Positions 3,001 to 45,235 of a stretch of DNA of 64,000 bases are shown one piece after another. The DNA is taken from IMG/VR virus record IMGVR_UViG_3300035703_000006, positions 183,113 to 247,112 of that record. The stretch is one strand, 5' to 3'. The stretch's first letter is position 1, and the number at the start of each line of letters is the position of its first letter. The notes under the pieces are model-generated. The model did not search any database. It saw only the letters and a program-made list of their open reading frames with translations, and was not told where the DNA came from. The position numbers were made by a program, and so were the translations under genes.

Positions 3001-5015
3001 GAACTACAGGAACTCAAGGAACTACAGGAACTCAAGGAACCACAGGTACTCAGGGAACTACAGGTACTCAGGGAACTACAGGTACTCAGGGAACTACAGG
3101 AACTCAAGGAACTACAGGTACTCAAGGAACTACAGGTACTCAGGGAACTACAGGAACTCAAGGTTTACAGGGTTTACAAGGAAGACAGGGAACTCAAGGA
3201 ACTACAGGTACTCAAGGAACCACAGGTACTCAAGGAACCACAGGTACTCAAGGAACTACAGGTACTCAGGGAACTACAGGAACTACAGGTTTACAGGGTT
3301 TACAAGGAACTACAGGTACTCAGGGAACTACAGGAACTCAAGGAACTACAGGAACTCAAGGAACTACAGGAACTCAGGGAACCACAGGTACTCAAGGAAC
3401 TACAGGAACTCAGGGAACCACAGGTACTCAAGGAACTACAGGTACTCAAGGAACTCAAGGTTTACAGGGTTTACAAGGAAGACAGGGAACTCAAGGAACT
3501 ACAGGTACTCAGGGAACTACAGGAACTCAAGGAACTACAGGAACTCAAGGAACTACAGGAACTCAGGGAACCACAGGTACTCAAGGAACCACAGGTACTC
3601 AAGGAACTACAGGTACTCAGGGAACTACAGGAACTCAGGGAACCACAGGTACTCAAGGAACTACAGGAACTCAAGGTTTACAGGGTTTACAAGGAACTAC
3701 AGGAACTACAGGTACTCAAGGAACTACAGGTACTCAGGGAACTACAGGTACTCAGGGAACTACAGGTACTCAGGGAACTACAGGTACTCAAGGAACTACA
3801 GGAACTCAGGGAACTACAGGAACTCAAGGAACTACAGGTACTCAAGGTTTACAGGGTTTACAAGGAACTACAGGAACTACAGGTACTCAAGGAACTACAG
3901 GTACTCAGGGAACTACAGGTACTCAAGGAACTACAGGAACTCAGGGAACTACAGGAACTCAAGGAACTACAGGTACTCAAGGAACTACAGGTACTCAAGG
4001 AACTACAGGTACTCAGGGAACTACAGGTACTCAGGGAACTACAGGTACTCAGGGAACTACAGGTACTCAAGGAACTACAGGTACTCAAGGAACTCAAGGT
4101 TTACAGGGTTTACAAGGAAGACAGGGAACTCAAGGAACTACAGGTACTCAAGGAACTACAGGTACTCAAGGAACTACAGGTACTCAAGGAACTACAGGTA
4201 CTCAGGGAACTACAGGAACTCAAGGAACTACAGGAACTCAAGGAACTACAGGAACTCAGGGAACCACAGGTACTCAAGGAACTACAGGTACTCAAGGAAC
4301 TACAGGAACTACAGGTTTACAGGGTTTACAAGGAACTACAGGAACTACAGGTACTCAAGGAACTACAGGTACTCAGGGAACTACAGGTACTCAAGGAACT
4401 ACAGGAACTCAGGGAACTACAGGAACTCAAGGAACTACAGGTACTCAAGGAACTACAGGTACTCAGGGAACTACAGGAACTCAGGGAACCACAGGAACTC
4501 AGGGAACCACAGGAACAGGTACTCAGGGACTTCAGGGACTCCAAGGTCCTGCTGCCGCAGGAGGAGGTGGTGGTGGATCTTTAACGGTTATTGATGACAC
4601 AACTACAAATGCTACTTGGTATGTTGGAGTTCTTTCTGTTACGGCAGGAACTGCTTCAACCATTCATACTTCATCTACAAAACTCAACTTCAATCCAAGC
4701 ACTGGAACGTTATCAGCAACAGTCTTTACATCTCTTTCTGACCAAACACAGAAAACAAATGTAAGAAAGATTGAAAATGCTTTAGAAATAGTTAAAAAAA
4801 TTGAAGGTGTAAAATATGAATGGATCGACAATCACAACCAACCCTCAATCGGTGTAATTGCTCAGGAAATTGAAAAAGTACTTCCTGAAGTAGTGACAAC
4901 AAATGATAAGGGACTGAAGACAGTTTCTTATGGAAATATTGTTGGTTTGTTAATTGAAGCAATTAAAGAACAACAAGTTCAAATTGAAAAACTGGAGAAG
5001 AAAATAAATGCCTAA
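3..5015 (+). CDS. Collagen-like tail fibre/appendage protein with C-terminal intramolecular chaperone (peptidase S74-like); 5' end lies outside the window
   Basis: Frame is open from base 3 (GIGSTGIRKTL...), so the listed 234 start is internal. Two long Gly-X-Y tracts flank a phage fibre domain (VKDKDIIVG...GGIAV). C-terminus SLSD..KTNV..IENAL..V..IEGVKYEW..IGVIAQEIEKVLPEVV..VSYGNIVGLLIEAIKEQQ matches the S74 chaperone pattern. Confidence 0.88.
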   Translation, partial: GIGSTGIRKTLTYDYINDSLKSSENVNIAIGKTYKIDGTDVLSSTTLGAGVTISNIRSVNPGLIFDRTTYSPTSDDYLLIYDNADNQLKKATIQNAALQGIQGTQGLQGTQGTQGTQGLQGLQGTQGTQGTQGTQGTQGTQGTQGTQGLQGLQGTQGTQGTQGLQGLQGTQGTQGTQGTQGTQGTQGTQGTQGTQGTQGTQGTQGTQGTQGTQGTQGTQGTQGTQGTQGTQGLQGLQGTQGLQGTQGLQGTQGTQGTQGTQGTQGLQGLQGLQGTQGTQGTQGTQGTQGTQGLQGTQGTQGTQGTQGTQGTQGTQGTQGTQGTQGTQGTQGTQGTQGTQGLQGTQGTQGTQGLQGLQGTQGTQGTQGTQGTQGTQGTQGTQGLQGLQGTQGTQGTQGLQGLQGTQGTQGTQGTQGTQGTQGTQGTQGTQGTQGTQGTQGTQGTQGTQGTQGTQGTQGLQGTQGLQGTQGTQGTQGLQGTQGTQGTQGLQGTQGTQGTQGLQGTQGTQGTQGTQGLQGTQGTQGTQGTQGLQGLQGTQGTQGTQGTQGTQGTQGTQGTQGPQGTQGTQGTQGTQGLQGTQGTQGTQGTQGTQGTQGTQGTQGTQGTQGTQGTQGTQGTQGLQGTQGTQGLQGTQGTQGTQGTQGTQGITGPVAGSANQIIFKDISNNPTGSGNLTFDGSNLYVGGNVTIGGTSVLIAANTLTVKDKDIIVGLATTAGGVVISNDTTANHGGIAVASTEGNPLIDINAGVGTDDIPSTYKQLMWIKAGTFTGLNTDAWISNYAVGVGTFDLSNGVRFAAGGMRVSDDITTINALDVNKLSPNGTDFGAASYVPIADGAGNWSWGTVSAAGAATTNAINIRDENTPQGSATTLNFTGDGISASVASGTATITVNTIQGLQGTQGTQGFQGTQGTQGTQGTTGTQGTTGTQGTQGLQGTQGTTGTQGTTGTQGTTGTQGTTGTQGTTGTQGTTGTQGTTGTQGTTGTQGTTGTQGTQGLQGTQGTTGTQGTTGTQGTTGTQGTTGTQGTTGTQGTTGTQGTTGTQGTTGTQGTTGTQGLQGLQGRQGTQGTTGTQGTTGTQGTTGTQGTTGTQGTTGTTGLQGLQGTTGTQGTTGTQGTTGTQGTTGTQGTTGTQGTTGTQGTTGTQGTTGTQGTQGLQGLQGRQGTQGTTGTQGTTGTQGTTGTQGTTGTQGTTGTQGTTGTQGTTGTQGTTGTQGTTGTQGTTGTQGLQGLQGTTGTTGTQGTTGTQGTTGTQGTTGTQGTTGTQGTTGTQGTTGTQGTTGTQGLQGLQGTTGTTGTQGTTGTQGTTGTQGTTGTQGTTGTQGTTGTQGTTGTQGTTGTQGTTGTQGTTGTQGTTGTQGTTGTQGTQGLQGLQGRQGTQGTTGTQGTTGTQGTTGTQGTTGTQGTTGTQGTTGTQGTTGTQGTTGTQGTTGTQGTTGTTGLQGLQGTTGTTGTQGTTGTQGTTGTQGTTGTQGTTGTQGTTGTQGTTGTQGTTGTQGTTGTQGTTGTGTQGLQGLQGPAAAGGGGGGSLTVIDDTTTNATWYVGVLSVTAGTASTIHTSSTKLNFNPSTGTLSATVFTSLSDQTQKTNVRKIENALEIVKKIEGVKYEWIDNHNQPSIGVIAQEIEKVLPEVVTTNDKGLKTVSYGNIVGLLIEAIKEQQVQIEKLEKKINA
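300..1950 (+). repeat. 9-bp periodic tandem repeat encoding (GTQ/GLQ)n
   Basis: ggWactcaa / ggtcttcaa / ggtacacag units directly visible. Confidence 0.97.
2685..4550 (+). repeat. 18-bp periodic tandem repeat encoding (GTTGTQ)n with GLQ/GRQ punctuation
   Basis: ggaactacaggtactcaa units directly visible. Confidence 0.97.
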
Positions 5016-36414: not shown

Positions 36415-37245
36415 ATGGACGCACAAGACCTGCATAATCTTTCAGAAGCATATAGAGAAGTTTATGATAATATAATGGAAAGGGAAGATAGTCCTTATGA
36501 AAAAGCATCTGATGCAGCATTAGATGCAAGATATGGATATGGAAGAGCAACTGGGGATAAACGTTCTTTTGGAAGAGCAGCAAATCGTGCGTCTGCTGCT
36601 GCAATGTTGAAAAGATTGAGAAGAGATAGGGATGAAGGAAGATCAACTTCTAGAGAATCTGGAGCAGATGCAGTTCATCAAGGATGGGCACACACCGCAA
36701 GAACAAGTTCAGACCAAACACCAGAAAAGAAAGAAAGAAGAGCAAAACTTGCTGATACCTCATATTCAAATCTCCCTGATGATGAAAAGGAAAAAGATAG
36801 AGTTTCTGCTGACGCAGTAAGAGCAGTTTATAATAGAAATAAATCAACTAAAAAGGAAGAAGTGGATATTTACGACATTATCCTTTCGCACTTACTTGAT
36901 GAAGGATATGCCGAAACACCAGAAGCAGCAGAAGTCATTATGGTCAATATGAGTGAAGATTGGAGAGAAGATATTGTAGAAGCATACAAAGAACTTCCTG
37001 TTGGTAAAATGAGAAAACAGGTCATTAAACACGCTGCCTCTGGCACAAAGAGAGCATTTTTGTCAAAATTTAGAGGACAAAAAGGAACTACAGCAGGAAA
37101 TGTTGAAGATGCAAAAGCAATGAAATCTTTGAATAAGGCAAAAAAAATTCAAGCTGAAATTGAAAATAGAGAAAAAATGGGATCAGATTTTTATCAGGGT
37201 TCTAGAGAAGGACGTGCTCTTGTCAATAAAAGAAGAGGTCGTTGA
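36415..37245 (+). CDS. Late protein with RyR-like domain and HLxDEGYA module
   Basis: TATAAATA at 36387; AVHQGW..YSNLPDDEKEKDR; YDIILSHLLDEGYAET.EAA..IMVNMSE.W. Confidence 0.62.
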   Translation: MDAQDLHNLSEAYREVYDNIMEREDSPYEKASDAALDARYGYGRATGDKRSFGRAANRASAAAMLKRLRRDRDEGRSTSRESGADAVHQGWAHTARTSSDQTPEKKERRAKLADTSYSNLPDDEKEKDRVSADAVRAVYNRNKSTKKEEVDIYDIILSHLLDEGYAETPEAAEVIMVNMSEDWREDIVEAYKELPVGKMRKQVIKHAASGTKRAFLSKFRGQKGTTAGNVEDAKAMKSLNKAKKIQAEIENREKMGSDFYQGSREGRALVNKRRGR

Positions 37246-37301
37246 GGACACCTCAGCATCTGTCCACTAGTCTTGCCAAGCACCCCAAGAGGTGCTATGA
37301 T
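37246..37301 (+). promoter_or_regulatory. Palindrome + -10 early promoter
   Basis: GGACACCT-N4-ATCTGTCC, TGCTATGAT. Confidence 0.6.
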
Positions 37302-37326
37302 TACTAGGTAATCAAGAGAGGCACTG

Positions 37327-37545
37327 ATGGAAGTTCTTGAGTTCACTGATTCTTCTGCTATTGCAAAGATTCAGTTTGATAATGAACAAAATCAAGTAGG
37401 AATTGCTTATACCTACAAACCAGACAAAGTTTATGTCTTTAACTGCAACGATTTGACTCTTGTGAAAGAAAAAGTCAAAGGTGCAGAAAGTGTTGGAAAA
37501 CTTGTTTCTGAACTTCGTAAAGATGGGACTTTGATTGCTACTTGA
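37327..37545 (+). CDS. KTSC-like small protein
   Basis: SSAIAKIQFD....IAY....YVF....AESVGK. Confidence 0.6.
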   Translation: MEVLEFTDSSAIAKIQFDNEQNQVGIAYTYKPDKVYVFNCNDLTLVKEKVKGAESVGKLVSELRKDGTLIAT

Positions 37546-37586
37546 CAAAGAGTTCCAAGTCCTCTACAATTGACTTGGGTTTTTAT

Positions 37587-37674
37587 GGAAGTGAGACTTG
37601 GTAGTCAGAGTCGTCTTATAAACGATTTGCCCCAGATTAGGGCCTTTGAGATGGTTCGAATCCATCCACTTCTA
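37587..37674 (+). tRNA. Atypical tRNA with anticodon TAT (nominally Ile)
   Basis: GGAAGTG/CACTTCT acceptor, AGTCGT-CTTATAA-ACGATT, long variable arm, GATGG-TTCGAAT-CCATC; TTGACA-N17-TACAAT promoter upstream. Confidence 0.75.
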
Positions 37675-37678
37675 CCTT

Positions 37679-37752
37679 GCTCGTTTAGCAATCTGTCCGA
37701 ATGCAATCGTCTCATAAACGATCGAAGGTGGGTTAGATTCCCACAACGAGCA
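37679..37752 (+). tRNA. tRNA-CAT (Ile2 or Met)
   Basis: GCTCGTT/AACGAGC; ATCGT-CTCATAA-ACGAT; variant T-loop TTAGATT. Confidence 0.8.
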
Positions 37753-37795
37753 CTTGACAATCATAACTCTTTGTGGTATGATTGTCTCATCATCT

Positions 37796-37881
37796 GGGCG
37801 AGTGATGAAATTGGTTAGACATCTCAGACTTAAAATCTGACGGGCATAACGCCCATGCGGGTTCGAGTCCCGCCTCGCCTA
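37796..37881 (+). tRNA. tRNA-Leu(TAA)
   Basis: GGGCGAG/CTCGCCT; TCAGA-CTTAAAA-TCTGA; long variable arm. Confidence 0.93.
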
Positions 37882-37931
37882 TAAAATAACGGAAAAGGCA
37901 TATAAATAACTATACACTTGCCTATTTAAAT

Positions 37932-38396
37932 ATGCCGATGCCTAGAAATTACACTGATGAGCAATTTATAGAAGCAGTTGAAACTTCTACAAGTATTAGA
38001 CAGGTATTGTTTAAACTTGGGCTAAAAGAAGCAGGTGGAAATTATAAAGTTGCTCAAAATAGAATGAAGCAACTTGGTGTTAATTTACTCTCTGGACCTA
38101 ATGGACAAGGTTGGAGTAAAGGAAAAACTCTTGGACCTAAAAGGTCTATTGAAGAATATTTAAAAGAAGATATAGTAGTTCAATCATTTCGACTCAAAAA
38201 TCGCCTATTAGCAGAAGGTCTCAAAGAACACAAGTGCGAGTGCTGTGGTATAACTAAATGGAATGGGCAACCAGCACCAATTGAACTTGATCACATAAAC
38301 GGCAACCATCACGATAATAGATTAGAAAATCTTCGTATCTTATGTCCTAATTGTCACGCTCAAACTGAAACTTACCGAGGAAAAAACAAAAAATGA
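37932..38396 (+). CDS. HNH homing endonuclease
   Basis: CECCG...ELDHINGNHHDNRLENLRILCPNCHAQT; TATAAATA at 37901. Confidence 0.9.
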   Translation: MPMPRNYTDEQFIEAVETSTSIRQVLFKLGLKEAGGNYKVAQNRMKQLGVNLLSGPNGQGWSKGKTLGPKRSIEEYLKEDIVVQSFRLKNRLLAEGLKEHKCECCGITKWNGQPAPIELDHINGNHHDNRLENLRILCPNCHAQTETYRGKNKK

Positions 38397-38998
38397 TTAC
38401 TATTGATTACTTGAAAACCATCTGCGAAACCCAATGGGATTGGAATAGAATTTTTGGAGCAGTAGTTGATGTTTATTCTGATAAAGGATTTAAAAGTAAA
38501 GCAGACAATTTTATTCGATCTAGAATTCTTGAGCTATCTGTAGTTACTTTTTCAGAACTTATTCACATTGATGAAGATGGTGTGGATTTTATTCTGATGG
38601 TTGATGGTCAAGAAGTTTTAATTGAAGGAAAATTTCAAAAAGATTTCTTTAAACAAAGAAAAATTAAAGGAACTAATGAATTTCATACTTGCAATAAAGT
38701 CAAGATGAAAAATTACCGAGGTAAAATTGACGAGGATGCATTTAATAGATTTAAAGGAGAGAATAAATTTCATTATGTAATGATTATTGACCGAGAGTGC
38801 CTTAAAGTTGCGTTTGCATCCAAAGAAACAGCACAAAAATATTATGTTCACGAAGGTGATGGAGTTTTTTCATATCTCCCTTACAATGAATTGACTTATC
38901 TTGATTTGGATGTTGAAAACTTTACATTTCCTTCTTCTAATGTTAAACTTTCTGAGTTATTAGATGAAGTAATCATCAATTGGATTAAGAACCGATGA
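38393..38998 (+). CDS. Putative PD-(D/E)XK nuclease-fold protein
   Basis: E..DGVDF..(9)..IEGK motif; translationally coupled to the methylase. Confidence 0.5.
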   Translation: MITIDYLKTICETQWDWNRIFGAVVDVYSDKGFKSKADNFIRSRILELSVVTFSELIHIDEDGVDFILMVDGQEVLIEGKFQKDFFKQRKIKGTNEFHTCNKVKMKNYRGKIDEDAFNRFKGENKFHYVMIIDRECLKVAFASKETAQKYYVHEGDGVFSYLPYNELTYLDLDVENFTFPSSNVKLSELLDEVIINWIKNR

Positions 38999-39834
38999 AA
39001 CAATTTCCGCTTAAGACGGCATTGCGCTACCCAGGAGGCAAGAGTAAAGCACTAAAAACTCTTGCTCCTTGGTTTCCGAGTGACTTCAAAGAGTTCCGTG
39101 AACCATTCTTGGGTGGTGGAAGCATTTCTTTAATGATTTCCCAAAACTACCCAAAGGTTCCTATTTGGGTAAATGACAAATACTTTTATCTCTATAACTT
39201 CTGGATTCAACTTCGTGATAATGGTCAAACATTATCAGAAAAGTTGAGAGCAATCAAAGAAGAAGTAAATGGGGATGATGAAGCACATAAGGACTTGTTT
39301 AATCTGTATCAAAGTGACATTGAAACTCTTGAACCTTTTGAACAAGCAGTTGCTTTTTTCATTCTAAACAAGTGTTCCTATTCTGGTTTGACTGAAAATT
39401 CTACATTCTCAGTTCAAGCATCACGTTCTAATTTTTCTCTTGTTGGTATTGACAAACTTCCAAAGTATTCATACATTATCAAAGACTGGAAAATCACAAA
39501 CATTGATTATGAATCAGTAATGAATGATGCTGGTGATAACGTATTTGTCTTTCTTGACCCTCCTTACGACATTAAAGATTTTCTTTATGGAACGGGAAGG
39601 AAATTGCACTCCTCATTCTCACACGAAAGATTTGCGGATGATGTAGATAAATGTCCTCATCGTTTTATGATTACTTATAATCTTAATGATTGGTTGTTAA
39701 ATCGTTATAAAGAGTACAATCTTAATGAGTGGAAACTTCGTTATTCAATGGTTCATCGTGGTGAAAAGGGTACTCAGGACAATGTAAAAACAGAATTATT
39801 AATTACAAACTATGTTCTAGATTCAGTTTTATAA
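38995..39834 (+). CDS. dam: DNA adenine methyltransferase (D12/Dam class)
   Basis: RYPGGKS, FREPFLGGGS, WVND, FLDPPY. Confidence 0.9.
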   Translation: MKQFPLKTALRYPGGKSKALKTLAPWFPSDFKEFREPFLGGGSISLMISQNYPKVPIWVNDKYFYLYNFWIQLRDNGQTLSEKLRAIKEEVNGDDEAHKDLFNLYQSDIETLEPFEQAVAFFILNKCSYSGLTENSTFSVQASRSNFSLVGIDKLPKYSYIIKDWKITNIDYESVMNDAGDNVFVFLDPPYDIKDFLYGTGRKLHSSFSHERFADDVDKCPHRFMITYNLNDWLLNRYKEYNLNEWKLRYSMVHRGEKGTQDNVKTELLITNYVLDSVL

Positions 39835-39863
39835 ATAAAGTATATAAAACACATTCTGGACCA

Positions 39864-40829
39864 ATGAATTATAAGGACCTTCAAAACATTTCCGATCTTT
39901 CCCAACAAATTCTTACAGAAGCTGCTTCTGAAGAGTACGATGTAATGAATCGTTGGCCTTATGCCTCACCTTATCTTCAAGAAGAAAGAGCACCTGGTGT
40001 AAAACCATATAAAGCAGGACCAACTCAAGCAGAAGTCAGAGCAGATGCAAGAGCAGCTCGTAAGAAGCACGTAGGAAAAGCAGAAGGTCAGTATGGTTAC
40101 GGTCCTGAAGAAAAGTTCAAAGACTGGAAAGATAGAGCAACACCCGCTTCAATACTTAGAAGAAGAAGTCCAGAAGGAGGAACAGAAGAGGAAACTGTTT
40201 CACAAAGAATGAATCGTGAAAAGCCCTATGTCAAGAGAATGACTGGTCCTCTTGCTAGAGCACAAGGAAGTCGTACTGCTTCTGCTGTTACTAGAACAAT
40301 TGAAGGTCCAGGAGAACCTCAAGCAGTTACAATGCCTAGAAAAGGTAGAGATGAAAAGAAAAAGCCTTCTAGAGAAATTGTTCGTAAGGGAAAGCAAGAA
40401 GAAAGTTTTGACCTTTGGGTAAATTCTCTTCTTGATGAAGGTTACGACCTAAGTGATTATAGTTGGGATGAGATGTATGAGATTTATATGAGTGAAGAGA
40501 GAATTGATCTTTATGATGTAATCCTTTCGCATCTTATTGACGAGGGTTATGCAGAAACTCAAGAATCAGCAGAAGCAATTATGGTGAATATGAGTGAAGA
40601 GTGGAAGCAGAGTATTGTTGAAGACATTAGAGGTGCCATTACTTATAATCCAAACACTCCTATTGGCAAATTGAAAAGAAGAATAAAGGGTTCTACTCCA
40701 GAAAAGAGAGAAGCAAGAACAAGAGCATATCAGGGAAATAGATCCGATGCTGCTGAGAGATATGGTGCATCTCAACGTAATCCATATGATGACAACAGGG
40801 GAGATATACCTTCTTTGAGGGGAAAATAA
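39864..40829 (+). CDS. Late protein with HLxDEGYA module(s)
   Basis: TATAAATA at 39830; LLDEGYDLS..; YDVILSHLIDEGYAETQESAEAIMVNMSEEW. Confidence 0.65.
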   Translation: MNYKDLQNISDLSQQILTEAASEEYDVMNRWPYASPYLQEERAPGVKPYKAGPTQAEVRADARAARKKHVGKAEGQYGYGPEEKFKDWKDRATPASILRRRSPEGGTEEETVSQRMNREKPYVKRMTGPLARAQGSRTASAVTRTIEGPGEPQAVTMPRKGRDEKKKPSREIVRKGKQEESFDLWVNSLLDEGYDLSDYSWDEMYEIYMSEERIDLYDVILSHLIDEGYAETQESAEAIMVNMSEEWKQSIVEDIRGAITYNPNTPIGKLKRRIKGSTPEKREARTRAYQGNRSDAAERYGASQRNPYDDNRGDIPSLRGK

Positions 40830-40852
40830 GACCACTTCCCAAACTGGCACAC

Positions 40853-40878
40853 AAGAGGGTTTCACCACCCTCTTTTTT
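40853..40878 (+). terminator. Intrinsic terminator
   Basis: AAGAGGGT-loop-ACCCTCTT followed by T-run. Confidence 0.75.
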
Positions 40879-40975
40879 AACTTTAATTTTATTTCATTTG
40901 AAGTTTGACAATTTTAAATAGTTAATTTAAAATTACATATATAAATAATAATTATTTTATTTTTTTATAACAATT

Positions 40976-41173
40976 ATGTCTGACACTGTAACCCAAATTG
41001 CTTCTGTTTTTGAAACTTGGAAACAAGAAGACGAAAAATTTGAAAATGGCAATGCTTCTGCTGGAACTAGAGCAAGAAAAGCACTTCAAGAAATTGCAAA
41101 ACTTGCAAAGGCTCGTAGAGCAGAAATCTCTGAAGCAAAGAATGCTAGAAAAGAAGCAAAAGTTGCATCTTGA
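40976..41173 (+). CDS. Histone H1-like (Hc1-family) protein
   Basis: KFENGNASAGTRARKALQEIAKLAKARRAEI; TTGACA-N17-TAAAAT and TATAAATA upstream. Confidence 0.72.
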   Translation: MSDTVTQIASVFETWKQEDEKFENGNASAGTRARKALQEIAKLAKARRAEISEAKNARKEAKVAS

Positions 41174-41327
41174 TCTTATAAATAAAACAACGACTTAAAA
41201 CAATGACTAACCTACATACACAACCAAAGAGTGATTATCGTCCCATTACCTGCTGGTTTATGGGAGAATCCCTCTTGGTTGCAAATATGGTAAGTCAAAG
41301 TTAAAAGAACAAACCATAAAAGCAATC

Positions 41328-41363
41328 AAGAGGGAGAATCCAAAAGGTTCTCCCTCTTTTTTT
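41328..41363 (+). terminator. Intrinsic terminator
   Basis: AAGAGGGAGAA..TTCTCCCTCTT followed by T-run. Confidence 0.8.
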
Positions 41364-41370
41364 ATGCCTT

Positions 41371-41523
41371 GTGCCACTTGTTCAACTGGTCGTATCATTT
41401 TCCGTTGAGGGTCAAACCCTGGTATATTACATGAGTCGGTGGGGGAACGAGACCCAAAGTGCTCAGGTCCACTTATGGAACTGGCACAAACCACTTGCCC
41501 CGCAACGGGTTCCGTGGTATTCT
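41371..41523 (+). promoter_or_regulatory. Two tandem palindrome + -10 promoters driving the tRNA operon
   Basis: TGCCACTT-N4-AACTGGTC..TGGTATATT and GTCCACTT-N4-AACTGGCA..TGGTATTCT, both with 39-nt spacing. Confidence 0.7.
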
Positions 41524-41573
41524 TAAGGGGTGGTTGAGAGACCACCAGCACCTAGACAACTTAAACCTTTAAT

Positions 41574-41653
41574 GGGGTGGTTCCCGTAGTGGCGAACGGA
41601 CCTGGCTTTTAACCAGAGATTATACACCGTGGGTTCGAGTCCCACCCACCCCA
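41574..41653 (+). tRNA. tRNA-Lys(TTT)
   Basis: GGGGTGG/CCACCCC; CTGG-CTTTTAA-CCAG. Confidence 0.88.
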
Positions 41654-41656
41654 TAT

Positions 41657-41747
41657 GAGAGAGTGTCTACTGTCGGCAATATGTGTAGTCCGTGTCTGTA
41701 AAACACGTACATAAGAACCATCGGGGGTTCGATTCCCTCCTCTCTCA
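41657..41747 (+). tRNA. tRNA-Tyr(GTA), enlarged D-arm
   Basis: GAGAGAG/CTCTCTC; CGTGT-CTGTAAA-ACACG. Confidence 0.85.
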
Positions 41748-41751
41748 CCTT

Positions 41752-41826
41752 GCGGACTTAGTTCAGTGGTAGAACGCAACCTTGCCAAGGTTGATGTCAC
41801 GAGTTCGAATCTCGTAGTCCGCTCCA
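41752..41826 (+). tRNA. tRNA-Gly(GCC)
   Basis: Canonical cloverleaf, CCA encoded. Confidence 0.95.
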
Positions 41827-41829
41827 TTT

Positions 41830-41903
41830 GACGATGTAACTCAGCGGTCTAGAGTGCTTCCCTGTCACGGAAGAAGTCGGGGGTTCAAATCCCCTCATCG
41901 TCG
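41830..41903 (+). tRNA. tRNA-Asp(GTC)
   Basis: GACGATG/CATCGTC; CTTCC-CTGTCAC-GGAAG. Confidence 0.93.
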
Positions 41904-41951
41904 TTGCTATGCTGCCGATGGAGTGTCCCTCCTTGGTGGTTGTAGAATTAA

Positions 41952-42023
41952 GTTCCTATCGACTAGCGGTTAGGTCACCACCCTTTCAAGGTGGTAGCAC
42001 GGGTTCGAATCCCGTTAGGAATA
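41952..42023 (+). tRNA. tRNA-Glu(TTC)
   Basis: GTTCCTA/TAGGAAT; CCACC-CTTTCAA-GGTGG. Confidence 0.93.
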
Positions 42024-42026
42024 CTT

Positions 42027-42100
42027 GGGAACATAGCTCCAATTGGTAGAGCACAGGATTGAAGATCTTGGTGTTGTCGGTTCAAGTCCGACTGTTCCCC
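42027..42100 (+). tRNA. tRNA-Phe(GAA)
   Basis: GGGAACA/TGTTCCC; CAGGA-TTGAAGA-TCTTG. Confidence 0.92.
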
Positions 42101-42104
42101 CCTT

Positions 42105-42176
42105 GGAACCGTAGCTCAGTGGTAGAGCACTCGGCTGATAACCGAGCGGTCACAAGTTCAAATCTTGTCGGTTCCA
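42105..42176 (+). tRNA. tRNA-Ile(GAT)
   Basis: GGAACCG/CGGTTCC; CTCGG-CTGATAA-CCGAG. Confidence 0.95.
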
Positions 42177-42230
42177 TTGTTGCCTTGATGCAACCTAAAT
42201 CGCACTTAGGTTAATTCAAGGCAACATTAA

Positions 42231-42320
42231 GGAAGTGTGGCAGAGAGGTCTAATGCAGTGGATTGCTAATCCGCCGATGTTCTTTAAGAGCATCCGTTGG
42301 TTCGAATCCAACCACTTCCG
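42231..42320 (+). tRNA. tRNA-Ser(GCT)
   Basis: GGAAGTG/CACTTCC, G73, long variable arm. Confidence 0.93.
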
Positions 42321-42324
42321 CCTT

Positions 42325-42396
42325 GGCAATGTAGTTCAGTGGTAGAACAAGAGATTCATACCCTCTATGTCGGTAGTTCAATTCTACCCATTGTCA
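42325..42396 (+). tRNA. tRNA-Met(CAT)
   Basis: GGCAATG/CATTGTC; anticodon loop TTCATAC. Confidence 0.88.
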
Positions 42397-42397
42397 T

Positions 42398-42469
42398 GTG
42401 TCGTTATCCTAGTGGTCAAGGAACCTGTTTGTGAAACAGGGTAGATGAGTTCAATTCTCATACGGCACC
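42398..42469 (+). tRNA. tRNA-His(GTG)
   Basis: GTGTCGT/ACGGCAC, C73; CCTGT-TTGTGAA-ACAGG; position -1 is T. Confidence 0.88.
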
Positions 42470-42471
42470 CC

Positions 42472-42544
42472 GCCCGATTAGCTCAGTGGTAGTAGCATCT
42501 GTCTAGTAAACAGAAGGTCGTCAGTTCGAATCTGACATTGGGCT
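42472..42544 (+). tRNA. tRNA-Thr(AGT)
   Basis: GCCCGAT/ATTGGGC; TCTGT-CTAGTAA-ACAGA. Confidence 0.9.
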
Positions 42545-42577
42545 CTCAACTATCCAGTAATCCTTGATAGTTCAAAT

Positions 42578-42653
42578 GTTCAGGTGGCAGAGTGGTCGAA
42601 TGCGAGAGTCTGCAAAACTCTTATCATCGTGGGTTCGAATCCCACCCTGAACT
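42578..42653 (+). tRNA. tRNA-Cys(GCA)
   Basis: GTTCAGG/CCTGAAC, U73; AGAGT-CTGCAAA-ACTCT. Confidence 0.93.
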
Positions 42654-42682
42654 CTTATCCCATCGAATTCGATGGGATTTAA

Positions 42683-42754
42683 TCCAGAATCGACTAATTG
42701 GCAGGTCAGCACCCTTTGAAGGTGTACGTCTAGGTTCGAATCCTAGTTCTGGAA
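42683..42754 (+). tRNA. tRNA-Gln(TTG)
   Basis: TCCAGAA/TTCTGGA; GCACC-CTTTGAA-GGTGT. Confidence 0.92.
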
Positions 42755-42756
42755 TT

Positions 42757-42829
42757 GTCCATGTAGCCCAATGGAAGAGGCAATAGACTAAGGATCTATT
42801 TGTTGGAGGTTCGAATCCTCTCATGGACA
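42757..42829 (+). tRNA. tRNA-Leu(AAG) lacking the long variable arm
   Basis: GTCCATG/CATGGAC, A73; ATAGA-CTAAGGA-TCTAT; 5-nt variable loop. Confidence 0.82.
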
Positions 42830-42833
42830 CCTT

Positions 42834-42905
42834 GTTGGGTTGGTGCAATTGGTAGCATCTTGGTCTCCAAAACCAAAGATCAGAGTTCAAGTCTCTGACC
42901 CTTCG
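42834..42905 (+). tRNA. tRNA-Trp(CCA)
   Basis: TTGGT-CTCCAAA-ACCAA; acceptor GTTGGGT/ACCCTTC with two U-U mismatches. Confidence 0.82.
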
Positions 42906-42908
42906 CCT

Positions 42909-42982
42909 ATCCTCTTAACTCAGTGGACTAGAGTGCTTGGCTACGAACCAAGAAGTCGCAGGTTCAAATCCTGCAGAGGATG
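42909..42982 (+). tRNA. tRNA-Arg(ACG)
   Basis: ATCCTCT/AGAGGAT; CTTGG-CTACGAA-CCAAG. Confidence 0.92.
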
Positions 42983-43011
42983 TTGACAATTTATACTACA
43001 TATAGTATGAT
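42983..43011 (+). promoter_or_regulatory. Internal sigma70 promoter
   Basis: TTGACA-N17-TATGAT. Confidence 0.75.
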
Positions 43012-43020
43012 TGTCATATT

Positions 43021-43103
43021 GGAGAGAGTCCGGTTGGTCGAGGACACCGCCTTGAAAGCGGCTGGGTGTAAAAGCTTCGCAGGTTCGATTCCTGTTCTCT
43101 CCG
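43021..43103 (+). tRNA. tRNA-Ser(TGA)
   Basis: GGAGAGA/TCTCTCC, G73, long variable arm. Confidence 0.92.
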
Positions 43104-43124
43104 TTGCTCCTTGTGAGCAACAAT

Positions 43125-43196
43125 GCCCTTGTAGCTCAGTGGTAGAGCAATGGTTTTGTAAACCATTGGTCGTCCGTTCAAATCGGATCGGGGGCT
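43125..43196 (+). tRNA. tRNA-Thr(TGT)
   Basis: GCCCTTG/CGGGGGC; ATGGT-TTTGTAA-ACCAT. Confidence 0.94.
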
Positions 43197-43234
43197 CTTG
43201 ACAAATCCGAAAGGGTATGTCATAATAAACAAAT

Positions 43235-43309
43235 GCGAAATTAATTCAGCGGTAGAATGTCTGCCTTCCAAGCAGAACGTCAGGAGTTCGAATCTCCTAT
43301 TTCGCTCCA
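43235..43309 (+). tRNA. tRNA-Gly(TCC)
   Basis: GCGAAAT/ATTTCGC, CCA encoded; TTGACA-N17-CATAAT upstream. Confidence 0.94.
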
Positions 43310-43384
43310 GGGTGATTAACTCAGTGGTAGAGTAATTCCCTTACAAGGAATGAGTCACTGGTTCGAATCCAGTATTACCCACCA
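43310..43384 (+). tRNA. tRNA-Val(TAC)
   Basis: GGGTGAT/ATTACCC, CCA encoded; abuts both neighbours with no spacer. Confidence 0.94.
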
Positions 43385-43458
43385 CGGAATGTAGCTCAGT
43401 TTGGTAGAGCACTCGCTTTGGGAGCGAGATGTCGCAGGTTCGAATCCTGTCATTCCGA
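43385..43458 (+). tRNA. tRNA-Pro(TGG)
   Basis: CGGAATG/CATTCCG; CTCGC-TTTGGGA-GCGAG. Confidence 0.95.
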
Positions 43459-43499
43459 CTTGGAGGTAATAAATATCTCCATTAATTGCAAAATACATT

Positions 43500-43655
43500 A
43501 TGTCTCTTATTTCACAAAAAGACCGAGAAAATGTTATTGAGTCTCTTGACTTCTACCTTTTTAGTAAAGGACAAGATTTCACAGAGGAAAAAAGAGCAGA
43601 ATTCAATGCTCTTCTCAATTGGATTAAACTTGAGTATTCAAAGAATGAAAATTAA
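43500..43655 (+). CDS. 51-aa hypothetical protein within the tRNA array
   Basis: MSLISQKDRENVIESLDFY..FNALLNWIKLE; overlaps the next start. Confidence 0.6.
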   Translation: MSLISQKDRENVIESLDFYLFSKGQDFTEEKRAEFNALLNWIKLEYSKNEN

Positions 43656-43818
43656 TCTTTGGCATTGTAAAGATATGGGTCAATGGAGATGGTCATTAAC
43701 TGACGACTCTAGACCAATTATTAAACAAGAAACTGGTCAAAGACCTAATTTACGTGATGCGATGAATGATATCGCAAATAATGTTGAACATATGATGGGT
43801 TATAGTGGGGAAGTGTAA
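43645..43818 (+). CDS. Hypothetical protein; 3' end overlaps the initiator-type tRNA
   Basis: MKINLWHCKDMGQWRWSLTD..LRDAMNDIAN. Confidence 0.65.
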   Translation: MKINLWHCKDMGQWRWSLTDDSRPIIKQETGQRPNLRDAMNDIANNVEHMMGYSGEV

Positions 43819-43878
43819 CGGTTGCACAGAAGTCTCATAAGCTTCAGGTAGGAGGTTCAATTCCTCCCCCCGCCACCA
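43804..43878 (+). tRNA. tRNA-Met(CAT), initiator-like
   Basis: A1-C72 mismatch, CCA encoded; lacks the three consecutive G-C anticodon-stem pairs. Confidence 0.82.
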
Positions 43879-43881
43879 AAT

Positions 43882-43955
43882 GCCGTGGGTAGTCTAGTGG
43901 TCAGGACAGGCAGACAATGCACTTGGAGTTTGGGTTCGATTCCCAATCTGCGGCA
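43882..43955 (+). ncRNA. tRNA-like RNA or pseudo-tRNA with aberrant anticodon arm
   Basis: GCCGTGGG/TCTGCGGC stem, normal D-arm, TTGGG-TTCGATT-CCCAA T-arm; no 7-nt anticodon loop. Confidence 0.7.
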
Positions 43956-43984
43956 CACACAACATACACACAAGGAGTAAACAA

Positions 43985-44188
43985 ATGACACCTTACGAAC
44001 TACGATTTGAAATTTTTAAGCAAGCATATAATTTTGCTAATGATAAGTTCAGTATCGAATATGATACTGCCCGTTGCTGGAATGAAAATTCTAGAAATAC
44101 GGTGAAAATAGATTACCCAGATTTTCCGACTTATGAGCAGGTAGAGTACCTTGCAGAAAAGATTAATACTTTTGTAAGTTCTAAGTAA
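43985..44188 (+). CDS. Conserved phage hypothetical protein
   Basis: MTPYELRFEIFKQA..YP.FPT...V..LA..IN.FVS; AAGGAG RBS. Confidence 0.75.
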   Translation: MTPYELRFEIFKQAYNFANDKFSIEYDTARCWNENSRNTVKIDYPDFPTYEQVEYLAEKINTFVSSK

Positions 44189-44219
44189 AATAGTGGGGTG
44201 GCAACACCCCCGTTAGTAT

Positions 44220-44292
44220 TCCCATCGACCGAGCAAGCGAACGGGCCCGACTGTTAATCGGAGATTGGTAGGGGCAGTACCTACGATGGGAG
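44220..44292 (+). tRNA. tRNA-Asn(GTT) with GGCAGTA T-loop
   Basis: TCCCATC/GATGGGA, G73; CCGA-CTGTTAA-TCGG; GTAGG-GGCAGTA-CCTAC. Confidence 0.82.
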
Positions 44293-44465
44293 TTAGAAGG
44301 GTTGGAAATGTCCGATTCTTCTAAATTTAATAAGGTCTGGAAAGTAAAAGGAGAATGGGAACCGAAAGGAGATACCTCACCTGCCTTATTATCTTATTCA
44401 CTGCCCTCTAATGCAGTGAAAATTGCAGAAAGTGTCTTCTGCGGGTGACGGGCACTCGTTACCCA
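44293..44465 (+). ncRNA. Multi-hairpin pseudoknotted RNA (manA-motif-like candidate)
   Basis: Five stems; loops AGTGTC and GGCACT are complementary. Confidence 0.65.
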
Positions 44466-44468
44466 TTT

Positions 44469-44549
44469 GCTCAAGTGGCGGAATGGTATACGCAGCAGAC
44501 TTAGAATCTGCCGTCGCAAGACTTGGAGGTTCAAGTCCTCTCTTGAGCA
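44469..44549 (+). tRNA. tRNA-Leu(TAG)
   Basis: GCTCAAG/CTTGAGC; GCAGA-CTTAGAA-TCTGC. Confidence 0.94.
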
Positions 44550-44575
44550 TTGAAAACTAAATAGTTTTCTTATAA

Positions 44576-44648
44576 GGGGGCATAGCTCAATTGGTAGAGC
44601 ACTTGATTTGCATTCAAGAGGTTTCGAGTTCGAGACTCGATGCTTCCA
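44576..44648 (+). tRNA. tRNA-Ala(TGC)
   Basis: GGGGGCA/TGCTTCC with G3-U70. Confidence 0.94.
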
Positions 44649-44698
44649 TTATGGAGAGTAGGGGAATATTATAAATAACTATAGTTGTGGAGAGCACT

Positions 44699-45235
44699 AT
44701 GGTTACTTGTAAGTGTCAAAAATGTGGATTACAGTTTGAAAAGATTAAAAGTGAATATAATAGAAAAATTAAATTGGGAACTCCATTTTTTTGTAGTTTG
44801 AAATGTTCTAGTAGTTTTGATACTTCACATTTGGATAACTGGAGAAAAAGTGAGGAAAACAAAAAGTTTATAAAGCAGTTTAGTGGAAGTAGTAAAGATG
44901 AATATTCTCCTTTCAGAGAGACATTAAAAAAAGTCAAAAATAGAAGTAAATCTAAAAATAGAGAATGTGATATTGATTTGCAATATTTAAAAGAGGTTTG
45001 GGAAAATCAAAAGGGCAAATGTCCATATTTGAAAAGAAAATTAGTTCTTCCCCTAACTGACCAATCTCACGACAAATCAAACCCAAATCTAATTGCTAGT
45101 TTGGATAGAATTGATAGCTCTAAAGGATACGTAAAGGGAAACATACAATTTATCAGCACGACCTTAAATTTTGCTAAAAATAAATATTCTGAAAATGTTC
45201 TCTTGAATTTAATTGAAATGTGTGCTACTATATAA
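44699..45235 (+). CDS. HNH-like endonuclease
   Basis: N-terminal CxxC..FCS..C; QKGKCPY..ASLDRIDSSKGYVKGNIQFIS...N; TATAAATA at 44670. Confidence 0.8.
   Translation: MVTCKCQKCGLQFEKIKSEYNRKIKLGTPFFCSLKCSSSFDTSHLDNWRKSEENKKFIKQFSGSSKDEYSPFRETLKKVKNRSKSKNRECDIDLQYLKEVWENQKGKCPYLKRKLVLPLTDQSHDKSNPNLIASLDRIDSSKGYVKGNIQFISTTLNFAKNKYSENVLLNLIEMCATI

What the first reader, a model, noticed from the sequence alone, without database searches (positions are those of the whole stretch)
37587..37674. UAU-anticodon tRNA with a non-Ile body: possible mistranslating or decoy tRNA
Seen: one nucleotide between acceptor and D stems, a 4-nt D-loop, a 6-bp anticodon stem and a long variable arm (GCCC/GGGC). The acceptor 5' strand GGAAGTG is identical to this phage's tRNA-Ser(GCT); the discriminator is A. 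Known: bacteria normally read AUA with lysidine-modified CAU, long variable arms belong to Ser/Leu/Tyr/Sec tRNAs, and SerRS ignores the anticodon. Inference: it may insert Ser or Leu at AUA, be a TilS-independent Ile tRNA, or act as a decoy. The adjacent CAT tRNA shares the anticodon arm (TCGT...ACGA), suggesting a dedicated AUA unit with its own promoter.
Basis: partly seen in the sequence, partly recalled or inferred. Interest (0 to 1): 0.72.

Follow-up and report, generated by a model that had tools for sequence, protein, structure and literature searches.

The report
Phage AUA tRNA with second anticodon-like arm
This cyanophage gene is a real and widely conserved but oddly shaped transfer RNA for the rare isoleucine codon AUA, whose extra hairpin copies the anticodon arm of the ordinary isoleucine tRNA and so may let the host's charging enzyme load it without the usual modification step.

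Summary
Window 37587-37674 (+) folds into a tRNA with a 7-bp acceptor stem (G1·U72), a single linker nucleotide, a 4-bp D stem with a UGGU loop, an extended anticodon stem, the loop CUUAUAA, an extra hairpin GCCC-CAGAUUA-GGGC, a 6-nt linker, a normal T arm and A73.

It is not a one-off. I found 132 distinct relatives, nearly all in viral contigs or phage records and a few in bacterial genomes. Named carriers include S-SKS1, S-SRM01, DSL-LC02, SynMITS9220M01, a Levilactobacillus phage and an Aeromonas phage. All have anticodon UAU, and compensatory changes occur in every stem.

The extra hairpin is the family's signature. Its loop always contains G-A-U. Its third base pair is C-G wherever the search did not constrain it (92 of 92 cases). 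These match known IleRS identity elements of tRNA-Ile(GAU).

The phage uses 1231 ATA codons, many at invariant Ile positions. It encodes no TilS or IleRS.

Best reading: a TilS-independent AUA decoder charged with Ile, in which the ribosome reads the UAU arm and IleRS is probably helped by the GAU arm. Charging, expression and modification are untested. Insertion of Ser or Leu is disfavoured, and a decoy role is not excluded. I found no published description.

The parts
37542..37570 (+). sigma70-type promoter-like site (TTGACA, 17 nt, TACAAT), 16 nt upstream of the tRNA 5' end
   Evidence: 11 of 12 consensus matches. The region has 7 such sites against 1.9 expected. This is a consensus match only; transcription start was not shown.
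37587..37674 (+). tRNA(UAU) with a reduced D arm and an extra GAU-bearing hairpin. Layout: acceptor 37587-93 / 37667-73; A8 37594; D arm 37595-37606; anticodon arm 37608-37628 with anticodon TAT at 37617-19; extra arm 37629-37643 with GAT at 37635-37; linker 37644-49; T arm 37650-66; A73 37674. It is followed by CC at 37675-76.
   Evidence: It fails the Rfam tRNA gathering score. Its best Rfam hit is tRNA-Sec at 31.8 bits, below that model's cut-off of 47.
37629..37643 (+). Extra ('variable') arm GCCC-CAGAUUA-GGGC, a look-alike of the tRNA-Ile(GAU) anticodon arm
   Evidence: G-A-U is invariant, C29'-G41' is C-G in 128 of 132 relatives, and the neighbouring pairs covary. A cyanobacterial tRNA-Ile(GAU) arm reads CACCC-CUGAUAA-GGGUG.
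37679..37752 (+). tRNA(CAU), most likely tRNA-Ile2 (the lysidine type), 2 nt downstream of the CC that follows A73
   Evidence: It has no C3-G70 and has C4-G69; relatives have C4-G69 plus C5-G68, or A3-U70. The rule comes from PMC1635315. The other two CAT tRNAs in the window look like an elongator Met (42324) and an initiator (43804).
37754..37782 (+). Second promoter-like site (TTGACA, 17 nt, TATGAT) before tRNA-Leu(UAA)
37796..37881 (+). tRNA-Leu(UAA), the third member of the UAU-CAU-UAA trio also seen in S-SKS1 and S-SRM01

Best explanation
This is a functional phage tRNA gene. It belongs to a widespread, previously unremarked family of tRNA(UAU) that carry an extra hairpin.

Shown:
- The gene folds as a tRNA, with compensatory changes in every stem.
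- The anticodon UAU, A37 and A73 are invariant. CCA is genomically encoded in many members.
- The phage uses ATA heavily, at positions where relatives have Ile.
- The phage has no TilS or IleRS of its own.
- The extra hairpin invariably displays G-A-U in a 7-nt loop closed by a stem whose third pair is C-G.

Inferred:
- The tRNA reads AUA on the ribosome with the UAU arm. That arm has a textbook anticodon loop, C/U-U-UAU-A-N.
- Host IleRS charges it with isoleucine.
- Because U34 is a poor IleRS determinant, the extra hairpin supplies the missing recognition. It is a copy of the tRNA-Ile(GAU) anticodon arm, with A at position 33, which should make it unfit for decoding.
- IleRS could read the hairpin either by taking the place of the anticodon arm on the enzyme or by adding contacts.
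- This would give the AT-rich phage AUA decoding that needs neither host tRNA-Ile2 nor lysidine synthesis by TilS.
- The adjacent Ile2-like tRNA(CAU) is the conventional, TilS-dependent route, carried in the same unit.
- In the cyanophage branch the D arm has shrunk to 4 bp plus an NGGN loop.
For: Structure:
- Searches give the same cloverleaf.
- 99.7% of cells are paired, 16 pairs show two-sided changes, and 0 of 500 shuffles reach this.
- D-stem variants GACU/AGUC, GUGU/ACAC and GCAU/AUGC occur, always with NGGN loops.

Family:
- Three IMG/VR scans anchored on different parts found it.
- 124 of 126 ARAGORN tRNA calls with the arm motif have anticodon tat.
- There are 132 distinct long tRNA(UAU) sequences.
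- 50 of 51 tRNA-like UAU hits sharing one normal D arm have the long arm.

Extra arm:
- G34'A35'U36' in 131 of 132, A38' in 128, C29'-G41' in 128 of 132. Pair 30':40' shows five pair types.
- In the two scans that do not constrain the arm, C-G is 45/45 and 47/47 and GAU is 92/92.
- The UAU arm has C29-G41 in only 3/45 and 21/47.
- The E. coli IleRS identity set is anticodon, t6A37, A73, C4-G69, U12-A23 and C29-G41 (review PMC9976931).
- The cyanobacterial tRNA-Ile(GAU) arm is CACCC-CUGAUAA-GGGUG.

Body:
- Members with normal D arms have C4-G69 in 33/41, C5-G68 in 33/41 and A73 in 40/41.
- CCA is encoded in 38/41, and in 35/62 reduced-arm members.
- After in-silico removal of the UAU hairpin, ARAGORN calls tRNA-Ile(gat) for 44 of 132.

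Demand:
- The genome has GC 34% and 1231 ATA codons, 17.2 per 1000 and 23% of Ile codons.
- In gp43, 6 of 11 ATA codons lie at near-invariant Ile columns and the rest at mixed, mostly I/V/L columns.
- No PF01171 or PF00133 match in the phage.

Literature fit: six allo-tRNA(UAU) converted to CUA gave no Ser suppression (PMC5389517). That is expected if identity is Ile rather than Ser.
Against: - No aminoacylation, expression or modification data exist for any member.
- Metatranscriptome contigs cover the upstream ORF but not the tRNA.
- Class I synthetases are generally held to bind tRNA with the variable region facing away. Reading the extra arm therefore needs a different junction conformation, which is unproven.
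- Position 37' of the extra arm is mostly U, not the t6A that bacterial IleRS favours.
- The reduced-D-arm members, including this one, lack the D-loop nucleotides (G16, D20, D21) and mostly lack C4-G69, all used by E. coli IleRS.
- Ordinary class-I tRNA(UAU) genes exist in some of the same phages (L071, L101). Bacteria such as M. mobile and L. plantarum charge plain tRNA-Ile(UAU). So the arm is not strictly needed.
- The identity rules come from E. coli, not from cyanobacteria.
- G1·U72, in 76 of 103 members, is unexplained.
Confidence: 0.55

Rival explanations
1. It is an Ile-charged AUA decoder, but the extra arm is not read by IleRS. The arm could instead serve as a handle or shield for another factor. 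Examples are keeping U34 unmodified, recruiting a U34-modifying enzyme so that AUG is not misread, blocking a host anticodon nuclease, or compensating structurally for the shrunken D arm. On this view its likeness to the GAU arm is a relic of an anticodon-arm duplication.
For: - The class-I binding mode puts the variable region away from the enzyme (general knowledge).
- Plain tRNA-Ile(UAU) works in M. mobile, L. plantarum and a B. subtilis suppressor (cited in PMC9976931 and PMC13752280).
- 37' is U rather than A in 112 of 132.
Against: A relic would not keep G-A-U, A38' and exactly the C29'-G41' pair invariant while neighbouring pairs and every other stem turn over. The conserved positions coincide with the IleRS identity set rather than with any other known recognition set.
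Confidence: 0.2
2. It is not a decoder but a tRNA-like decoy or regulator. The GAU arm and the UAU arm would bind and titrate a host factor that recognises tRNA-Ile, such as IleRS, TilS, a tRNA-targeting toxin or a defence nuclease. It might be part of a toxin-antitoxin-like module.
For: - In 37 of 124 related loci a Phd/YefM-like ORF of about 57 aa ends 5-48 nt upstream on the same strand. That is the place a toxin gene would hold.
- Mukai et al. found allo-tRNA(UAU) near toxin-antitoxin systems, and two CUA variants killed E. coli.
- The reduced D arm departs from decoder norms.
Against: - The anticodon loop is perfect and invariant, with U33, UAU and A37.
- CCA is encoded in most members and the T loop is standard.
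- Members sit inside ordinary decoder arrays, for example Aeromonas phage 1233.
- The phage has high ATA demand.
- The Phd-like ORF is absent from this phage.
Confidence: 0.15
3. It is charged by LeuRS or SerRS, as a class-II-shaped tRNA, and puts Leu or Ser at AUA. This would be mistranslation or recoding, as with nematode nev-tRNA-Ile(UAU) or the allo-tRNAs.
For: - It has a long extra arm.
- A73 is also the LeuRS discriminator.
- Bacterial LeuRS and SerRS ignore the anticodon.
- nev-tRNA-Ile(UAU) is leucylated in vitro (PMC3333845).
Against: - It lacks the G73 of bacterial tRNA-Ser.
- U8 is missing in the reduced form, and there is no room for an A14 partner.
- The anticodon never varies in 132 members. 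In anticodon-blind systems it does: 35 anticodons among allo-tRNAs.
- The 1231 ATA codons include invariant Ile sites of the DNA polymerase.
- No Ser insertion was seen with six allo-tRNA(UAU) derivatives.
Confidence: 0.07

Closest known systems
Bacterial tRNA-Ile(UAU) of Mycoplasma mobile, Lactobacillus plantarum/casei and the B. subtilis tilS-bypass suppressor
   Same: UAU anticodon, A37, A73, and AUA decoding without lysidine.
   Different: Those are ordinary class-I tRNAs, and recognition relies on an adapted IleRS or on tolerance. This family adds a GAU-bearing hairpin and, in cyanophages, a shrunken D arm. The family pattern was not found in the 401 Lactobacillales genomes searched.
tRNA-Ile2(CAU to lysidine) with TilS
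   Same: Same codon (AUA). The normal-D-arm members share the C4-G69/C5-G68 acceptor signature. G27·U43 occurs in the reduced members. An Ile2-like tRNA(CAU) is the usual neighbour.
   Different: U34 instead of C34, so TilS is not needed. The extra arm is additional.
allo-tRNA(UAU) of Acidobacteria (Mukai et al. 2017, PMC5389517)
   Same: Sec-like D stem with a tetraloop, a long arm and a UAU anticodon. Acidobacterial sequences L225 and L228 carry the same CCAGAUUAG loop. The paper reports them inactive as Ser suppressors.
   Different: allo-tRNAs are defined by 8/4 or 9/3 acceptor/T stems and mostly G73 or U73. This family is 7/5 with A73. The published sequences could not be compared because no supplement is held.
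Nematode nev-tRNA-Ile(UAU) (Hamashima et al. 2012, PMC3333845)
   Same: A class-II-shaped tRNA with a UAU anticodon.
   Different: It is eukaryotic, derived from tRNA-Leu and leucylated. Its arm is not reported as an anticodon-arm mimic.
tRNA-Sec (Rfam RF01852)
   Same: Best Rfam match. It shares the UGGU D loop, the extended anticodon stem and the long arm.
   Different: 31.8 bits against a cut-off of 47. The acceptor/T arrangement is 7/5, not 8/5. The anticodon is UAU, not UCA.
Class II tRNAs whose long arm is an identity element (bacterial tRNA-Ser; archaeal tRNA-Leu)
   Same: The extra arm is used, or here proposed to be used, by the synthetase.
   Different: SerRS reads the arm's shape. 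Here the loop sequence and one stem pair are conserved, and they match another isoacceptor's anticodon arm. The 3' linker is 5-6 nt in this gene rather than 1-2 nt.

Membership tests
tRNA (general) | Cloverleaf with acceptor, D, anticodon and T arms, a 7-nt anticodon loop with U33, a T loop of the form UUCRANY, and a discriminator | tested here: met
tRNA (general) | Reaches the Rfam RF00005 gathering score (29 bits) | tested here: not met
   One search lists 25 tRNAs in 37000-45000 but not this one. GenBank records of S-SKS1, S-SRM01 and DSL-LC02 leave their copies unannotated.
tRNA-Ile (bacterial identity set, E. coli rules) | A35, U36, A37, A38 and A73 | tested here: met
   Loop CUUAUAA and discriminator A. 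A73 in 101 of 103 relatives.
tRNA-Ile (bacterial identity set, E. coli rules) | G34 or lysidine-34 in the decoding anticodon | tested here: not met
   Position 34 is U. G-A-U occurs only in the extra arm.
tRNA-Ile (bacterial identity set, E. coli rules) | C4-G69, U12-A23, C29-G41 and D-loop G16/D20/D21 | tested here: inconclusive
   The window gene has A4-U69 and no such D loop, but it does have C29-G41 in both arms. Of the normal-D-arm relatives, 16 of 41 carry C4-G69, U12, C29-G41 and A73 together.
tRNA-Ile (any) | Charged with isoleucine by IleRS | not testable with these tools
   This needs aminoacylation assays.
allo-tRNA | 8/4 or 9/3 acceptor/T-stem composition | tested here: not met
   The arrangement is 7/5, with covariation in all 12 pairs' columns.
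allo-tRNA | Long arm, long D stem with a tetraloop, and G73/U73 (Ser identity) | tested here: inconclusive
   The long arm and the tetraloop are present. The D stem is only 4 bp and the discriminator is A.
tRNA-Sec | RF01852 gathering score, UCA anticodon and an 8-bp acceptor stem | tested here: not met
   31.8 bits against 47, anticodon UAU, and a 7-bp acceptor stem.
Class II tRNA (Leu/Ser/Tyr) | Long variable arm flanked by 1-2 nt on the 3' side, a 3-bp D stem with a large loop, and a Leu/Ser/Tyr anticodon | tested here: not met
   Only the long arm is shared. The 3' linker is 6 nt, the D arm is 4 bp plus 4 nt, and the anticodon is UAU.

The most novel reading that the evidence does not exclude
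This is a natural 'two-armed' tRNA in which decoding and synthetase identity are physically split. The ribosome would read the UAU arm. IleRS would read a second arm that mimics the anticodon arm and bears GAU and C29-G41. Phages of many host phyla would thereby decode AUA without TilS. This would amount to a new class of tRNA-Ile, and would also reinterpret the 'inactive' allo-tRNA(UAU) group.
Probability: 0.35. Interest if true: 0.9.

Novelty: new variant of a known kind. Interest (0 to 1): 0.75.

Why it matters
AUA is the one sense codon for which bacteria need a dedicated, essential modification enzyme (TilS). IleRS also recognises a plain UAU anticodon poorly. A mobile tRNA that carries its own synthetase-recognition arm would be a new solution to that old problem.

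It would explain several things at once:
- Why an extra arm is tied to a single anticodon across phages of cyanobacteria, lactobacilli, Aeromonas and others.
- The puzzling allo-tRNA(UAU) results.

It would also offer a natural scaffold for separating tRNA identity from decoding in genetic-code engineering.

There is a practical point too. The reduced-D-arm form escapes the Rfam tRNA model, and it is unannotated in three of the five GenBank phage records I inspected. Phage tRNA inventories and codon-supply analyses may therefore miss an AUA reader.

Tried and rejected
- Alternative pairings of AGAG or UCAGAG with the 3' linker CUUUGA would enclose both hairpins. I considered them by eye and dropped them because they are not kept in the CUUGA subfamily.
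- An 8-bp acceptor stem (Sec/allo-like) was rejected. The base before G1 varies, and many members encode A73-CCA.
- The identity of the acceptor 5' strand with tRNA-Ser(GCT) is true but not general. Relatives use GCGAGUG, GCCAGCG and GCUCGUG.
- I looked for a link to the native tRNA-Ile(UAU) of lactobacilli. No genome with the pattern was found among 401 Lactobacillales. The Tomikawa 2018 and Uesugi 2022 papers are not held.
- A phage-encoded TilS or class-I synthetase was not found.
- Expression: four RNA runs held only Logan contigs, and the tRNA itself is not covered. X18 holds a roughly 93% identical relative in a 4.9-kb contig that may be DNA. This counts as no evidence either way.
- The Pfam search of the upstream 72-aa ORF found nothing.
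- The supplement of Mukai 2017 is not held.
- Seven literature searches found no description of the family.
- I did not run complex prediction. IleRS plus the tRNA sits at the size limit, and RNA jobs get no verdict.

Full report
**1. The observation**

Window 37587-37674 (+) is called tRNA(tat) by ARAGORN. Its minimum-free-energy fold and its centroid fold are the same cloverleaf (-28 kcal/mol, z = -2.65). The parts are:
- acceptor GGAAGUG/CACUUCU, with G1·U72
- a single linker nucleotide, A8
- D stem GACU/AGUC with loop UGGU
- one A
- an anticodon stem of five standard pairs, extended by A-U and G·U
- anticodon loop CUUAUAA
- an extra hairpin GCCC-CAGAUUA-GGGC, directly abutting the anticodon stem
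- a 6-nt linker CUUUGA
- a standard T arm
- A73, followed by CC

That includes the shared 5' acceptor strand with tRNA-Ser(GCT), the shared anticodon arm with the CAT tRNA 2 nt downstream, and a near-consensus promoter-like site at 37542-37570.

The gene fails the Rfam general tRNA model at its gathering score, while 25 other tRNAs nearby pass. Its best Rfam match is tRNA-Sec at 31.8 bits, below that model's cut-off of 47.

**2. It is a conserved family, not a freak**

blastn found copies in Synechococcus phages S-SKS1, S-SRM01 and DSL-LC02. All three copies are unannotated.

An IMG/VR scan anchored on the odd D arm returned 75 tRNA-like hits, all with anticodon TAT. Their 46 distinct sequences (alignment A1) fit the cloverleaf as follows:
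- 99.7% of cells are paired.
- 16 of 28 pairs show two-sided changes.
- No shuffle out of 500 reaches this.
- RNAalifold finds the same structure unaided.

The D stem itself covaries in further members (GUGU/ACAC, GCAU/AUGC), always with an NGGN loop.

A second scan, anchored on the extra-arm loop plus the T loop, showed that the same loop also sits in many tRNAs with perfectly normal D arms. Of 126 ARAGORN tRNA calls carrying the motif, 124 have anticodon tat.

A third scan was anchored only on one normal D arm plus YTTATA. In it, 50 of 51 tRNA-like hits have the long arm.

Named carriers also include SynMITS9220M01 and Levilactobacillus phage ENFP1 (both annotated simply 'tRNA-Ile'), Lactobacillus phage LpeD and Aeromonas phage 1233. 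In cellular genomes the family is rare. It appeared in two Acidobacteria MAGs, an Allomesorhizobium genome and one other genome.

**3. The setting**

The window is the last 64 kb of a 247,112-bp IMG/VR virus record (GC 34%, judged complete). It is a T4-like cyanomyovirus, with gp20, gp18, gp17, gp43, psbA and psbD. Reads place it in freshwater metagenomes.

It has 28 tRNA genes. ATA is used 1231 times, which is 17.2 per 1000 codons and 23% of Ile codons. In the DNA polymerase, 6 of 11 ATA codons fall in columns that are almost invariantly Ile in 116 homologues. The other five fall in mixed columns, mostly I/V/L. So ATA means Ile to this phage.

The phage encodes no TilS-type PP-loop enzyme and no class-I synthetase.

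The three CAT tRNAs sort as follows, by the rules of Silva et al. 2006 (PMC1635315):
- initiator-like: 43804, with an A1xC72 mismatch
- elongator-Met-like: 42324, with C3-G70
- Ile2-like: the neighbour at 37679, which lacks C3-G70 and has C4-G69. Its relatives carry C4-G69 plus C5-G68, or A3-U70.

A CAT tRNA is the commonest neighbour of the family. It lies within 100 nt downstream in 26 of 73 reduced-arm members. The UAU-CAU-Leu(UAA) trio recurs in S-SKS1 and S-SRM01.

**4. The key finding: the extra arm looks like a tRNA-Ile(GAU) anticodon arm**

Over 132 distinct long tRNA(UAU) sequences, the 7-nt loop reads as follows:

| Loop position | Residue | Count of 132 |
|---|---|---|
| 32' | C | 128 |
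| 33' | A | 129 |
| 34' | G | 131 |
| 35' | A | 131 |
| 36' | U | 131 |
| 37' | U / A / G | 112 / 16 / 4 |
| 38' | A | 128 |

The loop variants seen are CAGAUUA, CAGAUAA, UAGAUAA, CAGAUGG, UAGAUGG, CCGAUUA and CAGAUCA.

In the stem, the closing pair is C-G in 118 and the third pair from the loop is C-G in 128. The pairs between and beyond them change freely; 30':40' shows five pair types.

The two scans that place no constraint on the arm give the cleanest test:
- The third pair is C-G in 45/45 and 47/47.
- GAU is present in 92/92.
- The same pair in the UAU arm is C-G in only 3/45 and 21/47.

The E. coli IleRS identity set is the anticodon (G34, A35, U36), t6A37, A38, A73, C4-G69, U12-A23 and C29-G41 (review PMC9976931; A38 from my own recollection of the original work). 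So the conserved positions of the extra arm are those IleRS uses.

A cyanobacterial tRNA-Ile(GAU) fetched here reads CACCC-CUGAUAA-GGGUG. The window's arm, GCCC-CAGAUUA-GGGC, differs in the loop only at positions 33 and 37.

Relatives with normal D arms also have a tRNA-Ile-like body:
- C4-G69 in 33/41
- C5-G68 in 33/41
- A73 in 40/41
- encoded CCA in 38/41
- all of C4-G69, U12, C29-G41 and A73 together in 16/41

When the UAU hairpin is removed in silico, ARAGORN calls the remainder tRNA-Ile(gat) in 44 of 132 cases, though not for the window's own reduced form.

**5. Mechanism proposed**

Shown:
- a real tRNA fold
- an invariant UAU anticodon in a textbook anticodon loop
- an invariant GAU hairpin
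- strong ATA demand
- no phage TilS or IleRS

Inferred:
- The UAU arm decodes AUA.
- Host IleRS attaches Ile.
- The GAU hairpin supplies the recognition that U34 cannot. Its A33 should deny it a U-turn and hence decoding.

The exclusive tie between this arm and one anticodon is what the model predicts, because only a U34 tRNA-Ile needs such help. In tRNAs charged by anticodon-blind enzymes, the anticodon wanders. Allo-tRNAs, for example, show 35 different anticodons.

The model also fits the report that six allo-tRNA(UAU) converted to CUA gave no Ser suppression and that two were toxic.

The two hairpins, the D stem, the acceptor stem and the T stem meet at one junction. Either hairpin could in principle stack under the D stem. 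In this gene the 6 nt that follow the GAU hairpin are about as long as a normal variable loop. This geometric step is conjecture.

**6. Rivals**

- (a) An Ile decoder whose arm serves another partner or is a relic (0.20).
- (b) A decoy or regulator (0.15). This draws some colour from a Phd/YefM-like ORF of about 57 aa. That ORF ends 5-48 nt upstream on the same strand in 37 of 124 related loci, including S-SKS1 and S-SRM01. This phage lacks it.
- (c) Leu or Ser mischarging (0.07). Against it: A73, the invariant anticodon, and ATA at conserved Ile sites.

**7. What is not known**

- No charging, processing or modification data exist.
- Metatranscriptome contigs cover the upstream ORF, and one ends at 37588, next to the tRNA 5' end. 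They do not cover the tRNA, so expression is not shown.
- The host is inferred, not known.
- The identity rules are from E. coli.
- G1·U72, in 76 of 103 members, is unexplained.

**8. Novelty**

Seven full-text searches found no description of a phage tRNA(UAU) with such an arm. The nearest published items are allo-tRNA(UAU), nev-tRNA-Ile(UAU) and plain bacterial tRNA-Ile(UAU).

I rate it a new variant of a known kind, with interest 0.75. The probability that the split of decoding and identity is real is about 0.35.

Noticed in passing
L001:1313-1486, L002:1276-1458 and 35 other related loci (e.g. L068:3962-4237, minus strand): A conserved ORF of about 57 aa resembles Phd/YefM antitoxins (Pfam PF02604, E = 9e-6, below the cut-off) and has a C-terminal LIRIHTDHEEG/LIRIYTENNNEA tail. 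It ends 5-48 nt upstream of the tRNA(UAU) on the same strand in 36 of the 37 loci that have it, out of 124 examined; in DSL-LC02 it lies 167 nt upstream. The window's genome has no homologue.
   Followed up: partly
window 42757-42831: A tRNA with the Leu anticodon AAG is only 75 nt long and has no long variable arm (Rfam tRNA score 60.6 bits). Bacterial tRNA-Leu is normally class II.
   Followed up: no
window 41573-41654: tRNA-Lys(UUU) is 82 nt long, with a variable region of about 12 nt that contains AGAUUA, the same hexamer as the extra-arm loop. It has a low Rfam score (40.8 bits). No other Lys(UUU) among 36 in the held loci is longer than 78 nt.
   Followed up: partly
window 43019-43103 and 43883-43954: ARAGORN's tRNA-Ser(UGA) at 43019-43103 is not reported by Rfam at its gathering score. 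Conversely, Rfam reports a weak extra tRNA (33.4 bits) at 43883-43954 that ARAGORN does not call.
   Followed up: no
L087 and L121 (IMG/VR contigs): The 5' half of a reduced-arm tRNA(UAU), up to its anticodon arm, runs straight into a CAT tRNA. The extra arm, the T arm and the 3' acceptor strand are missing. This is an apparent deletion remnant.
   Followed up: no
A1 column 8 versus the 3' linker; L125, L126, L191, L209: Position 8 is A where the linker reads CUU(U)GA, and G where it reads CUCGA. This may be a tertiary pair (A:U changing to G:C). There are few independent events, and L059 and L321 do not fit.
   Followed up: partly
window 37932-38396: The ORF just downstream of the tRNA trio has weak HNH-endonuclease matches (E = 6e-5, just under the cut-off). 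HNH-like ORFs also flank the tRNA in DSL-LC02 and in about 10 related loci, which hints that the tRNA cassette is mobile.
   Followed up: no
window 37336-37588 (run X15) and loose ends at 37621 and 37626: One metatranscriptome contig ends exactly at the tRNA's 5' end. Other contigs in RNA-labelled runs carry related but non-identical members of the tRNA family.
   Followed up: partly
window 286-1956: A 556-aa open frame has no Ile codon at all (no ATA, ATT or ATC). The neighbouring ORF, 2283-5015, is collagen-repeat rich.
   Followed up: no
L071 and L101: Some phages carry an ordinary 73-74-nt tRNA(UAU) in addition to the extra-arm tRNA(UAU). In L101 there is also the CAT tRNA, so three AUA-related tRNAs lie within about 300 nt.
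   Followed up: no
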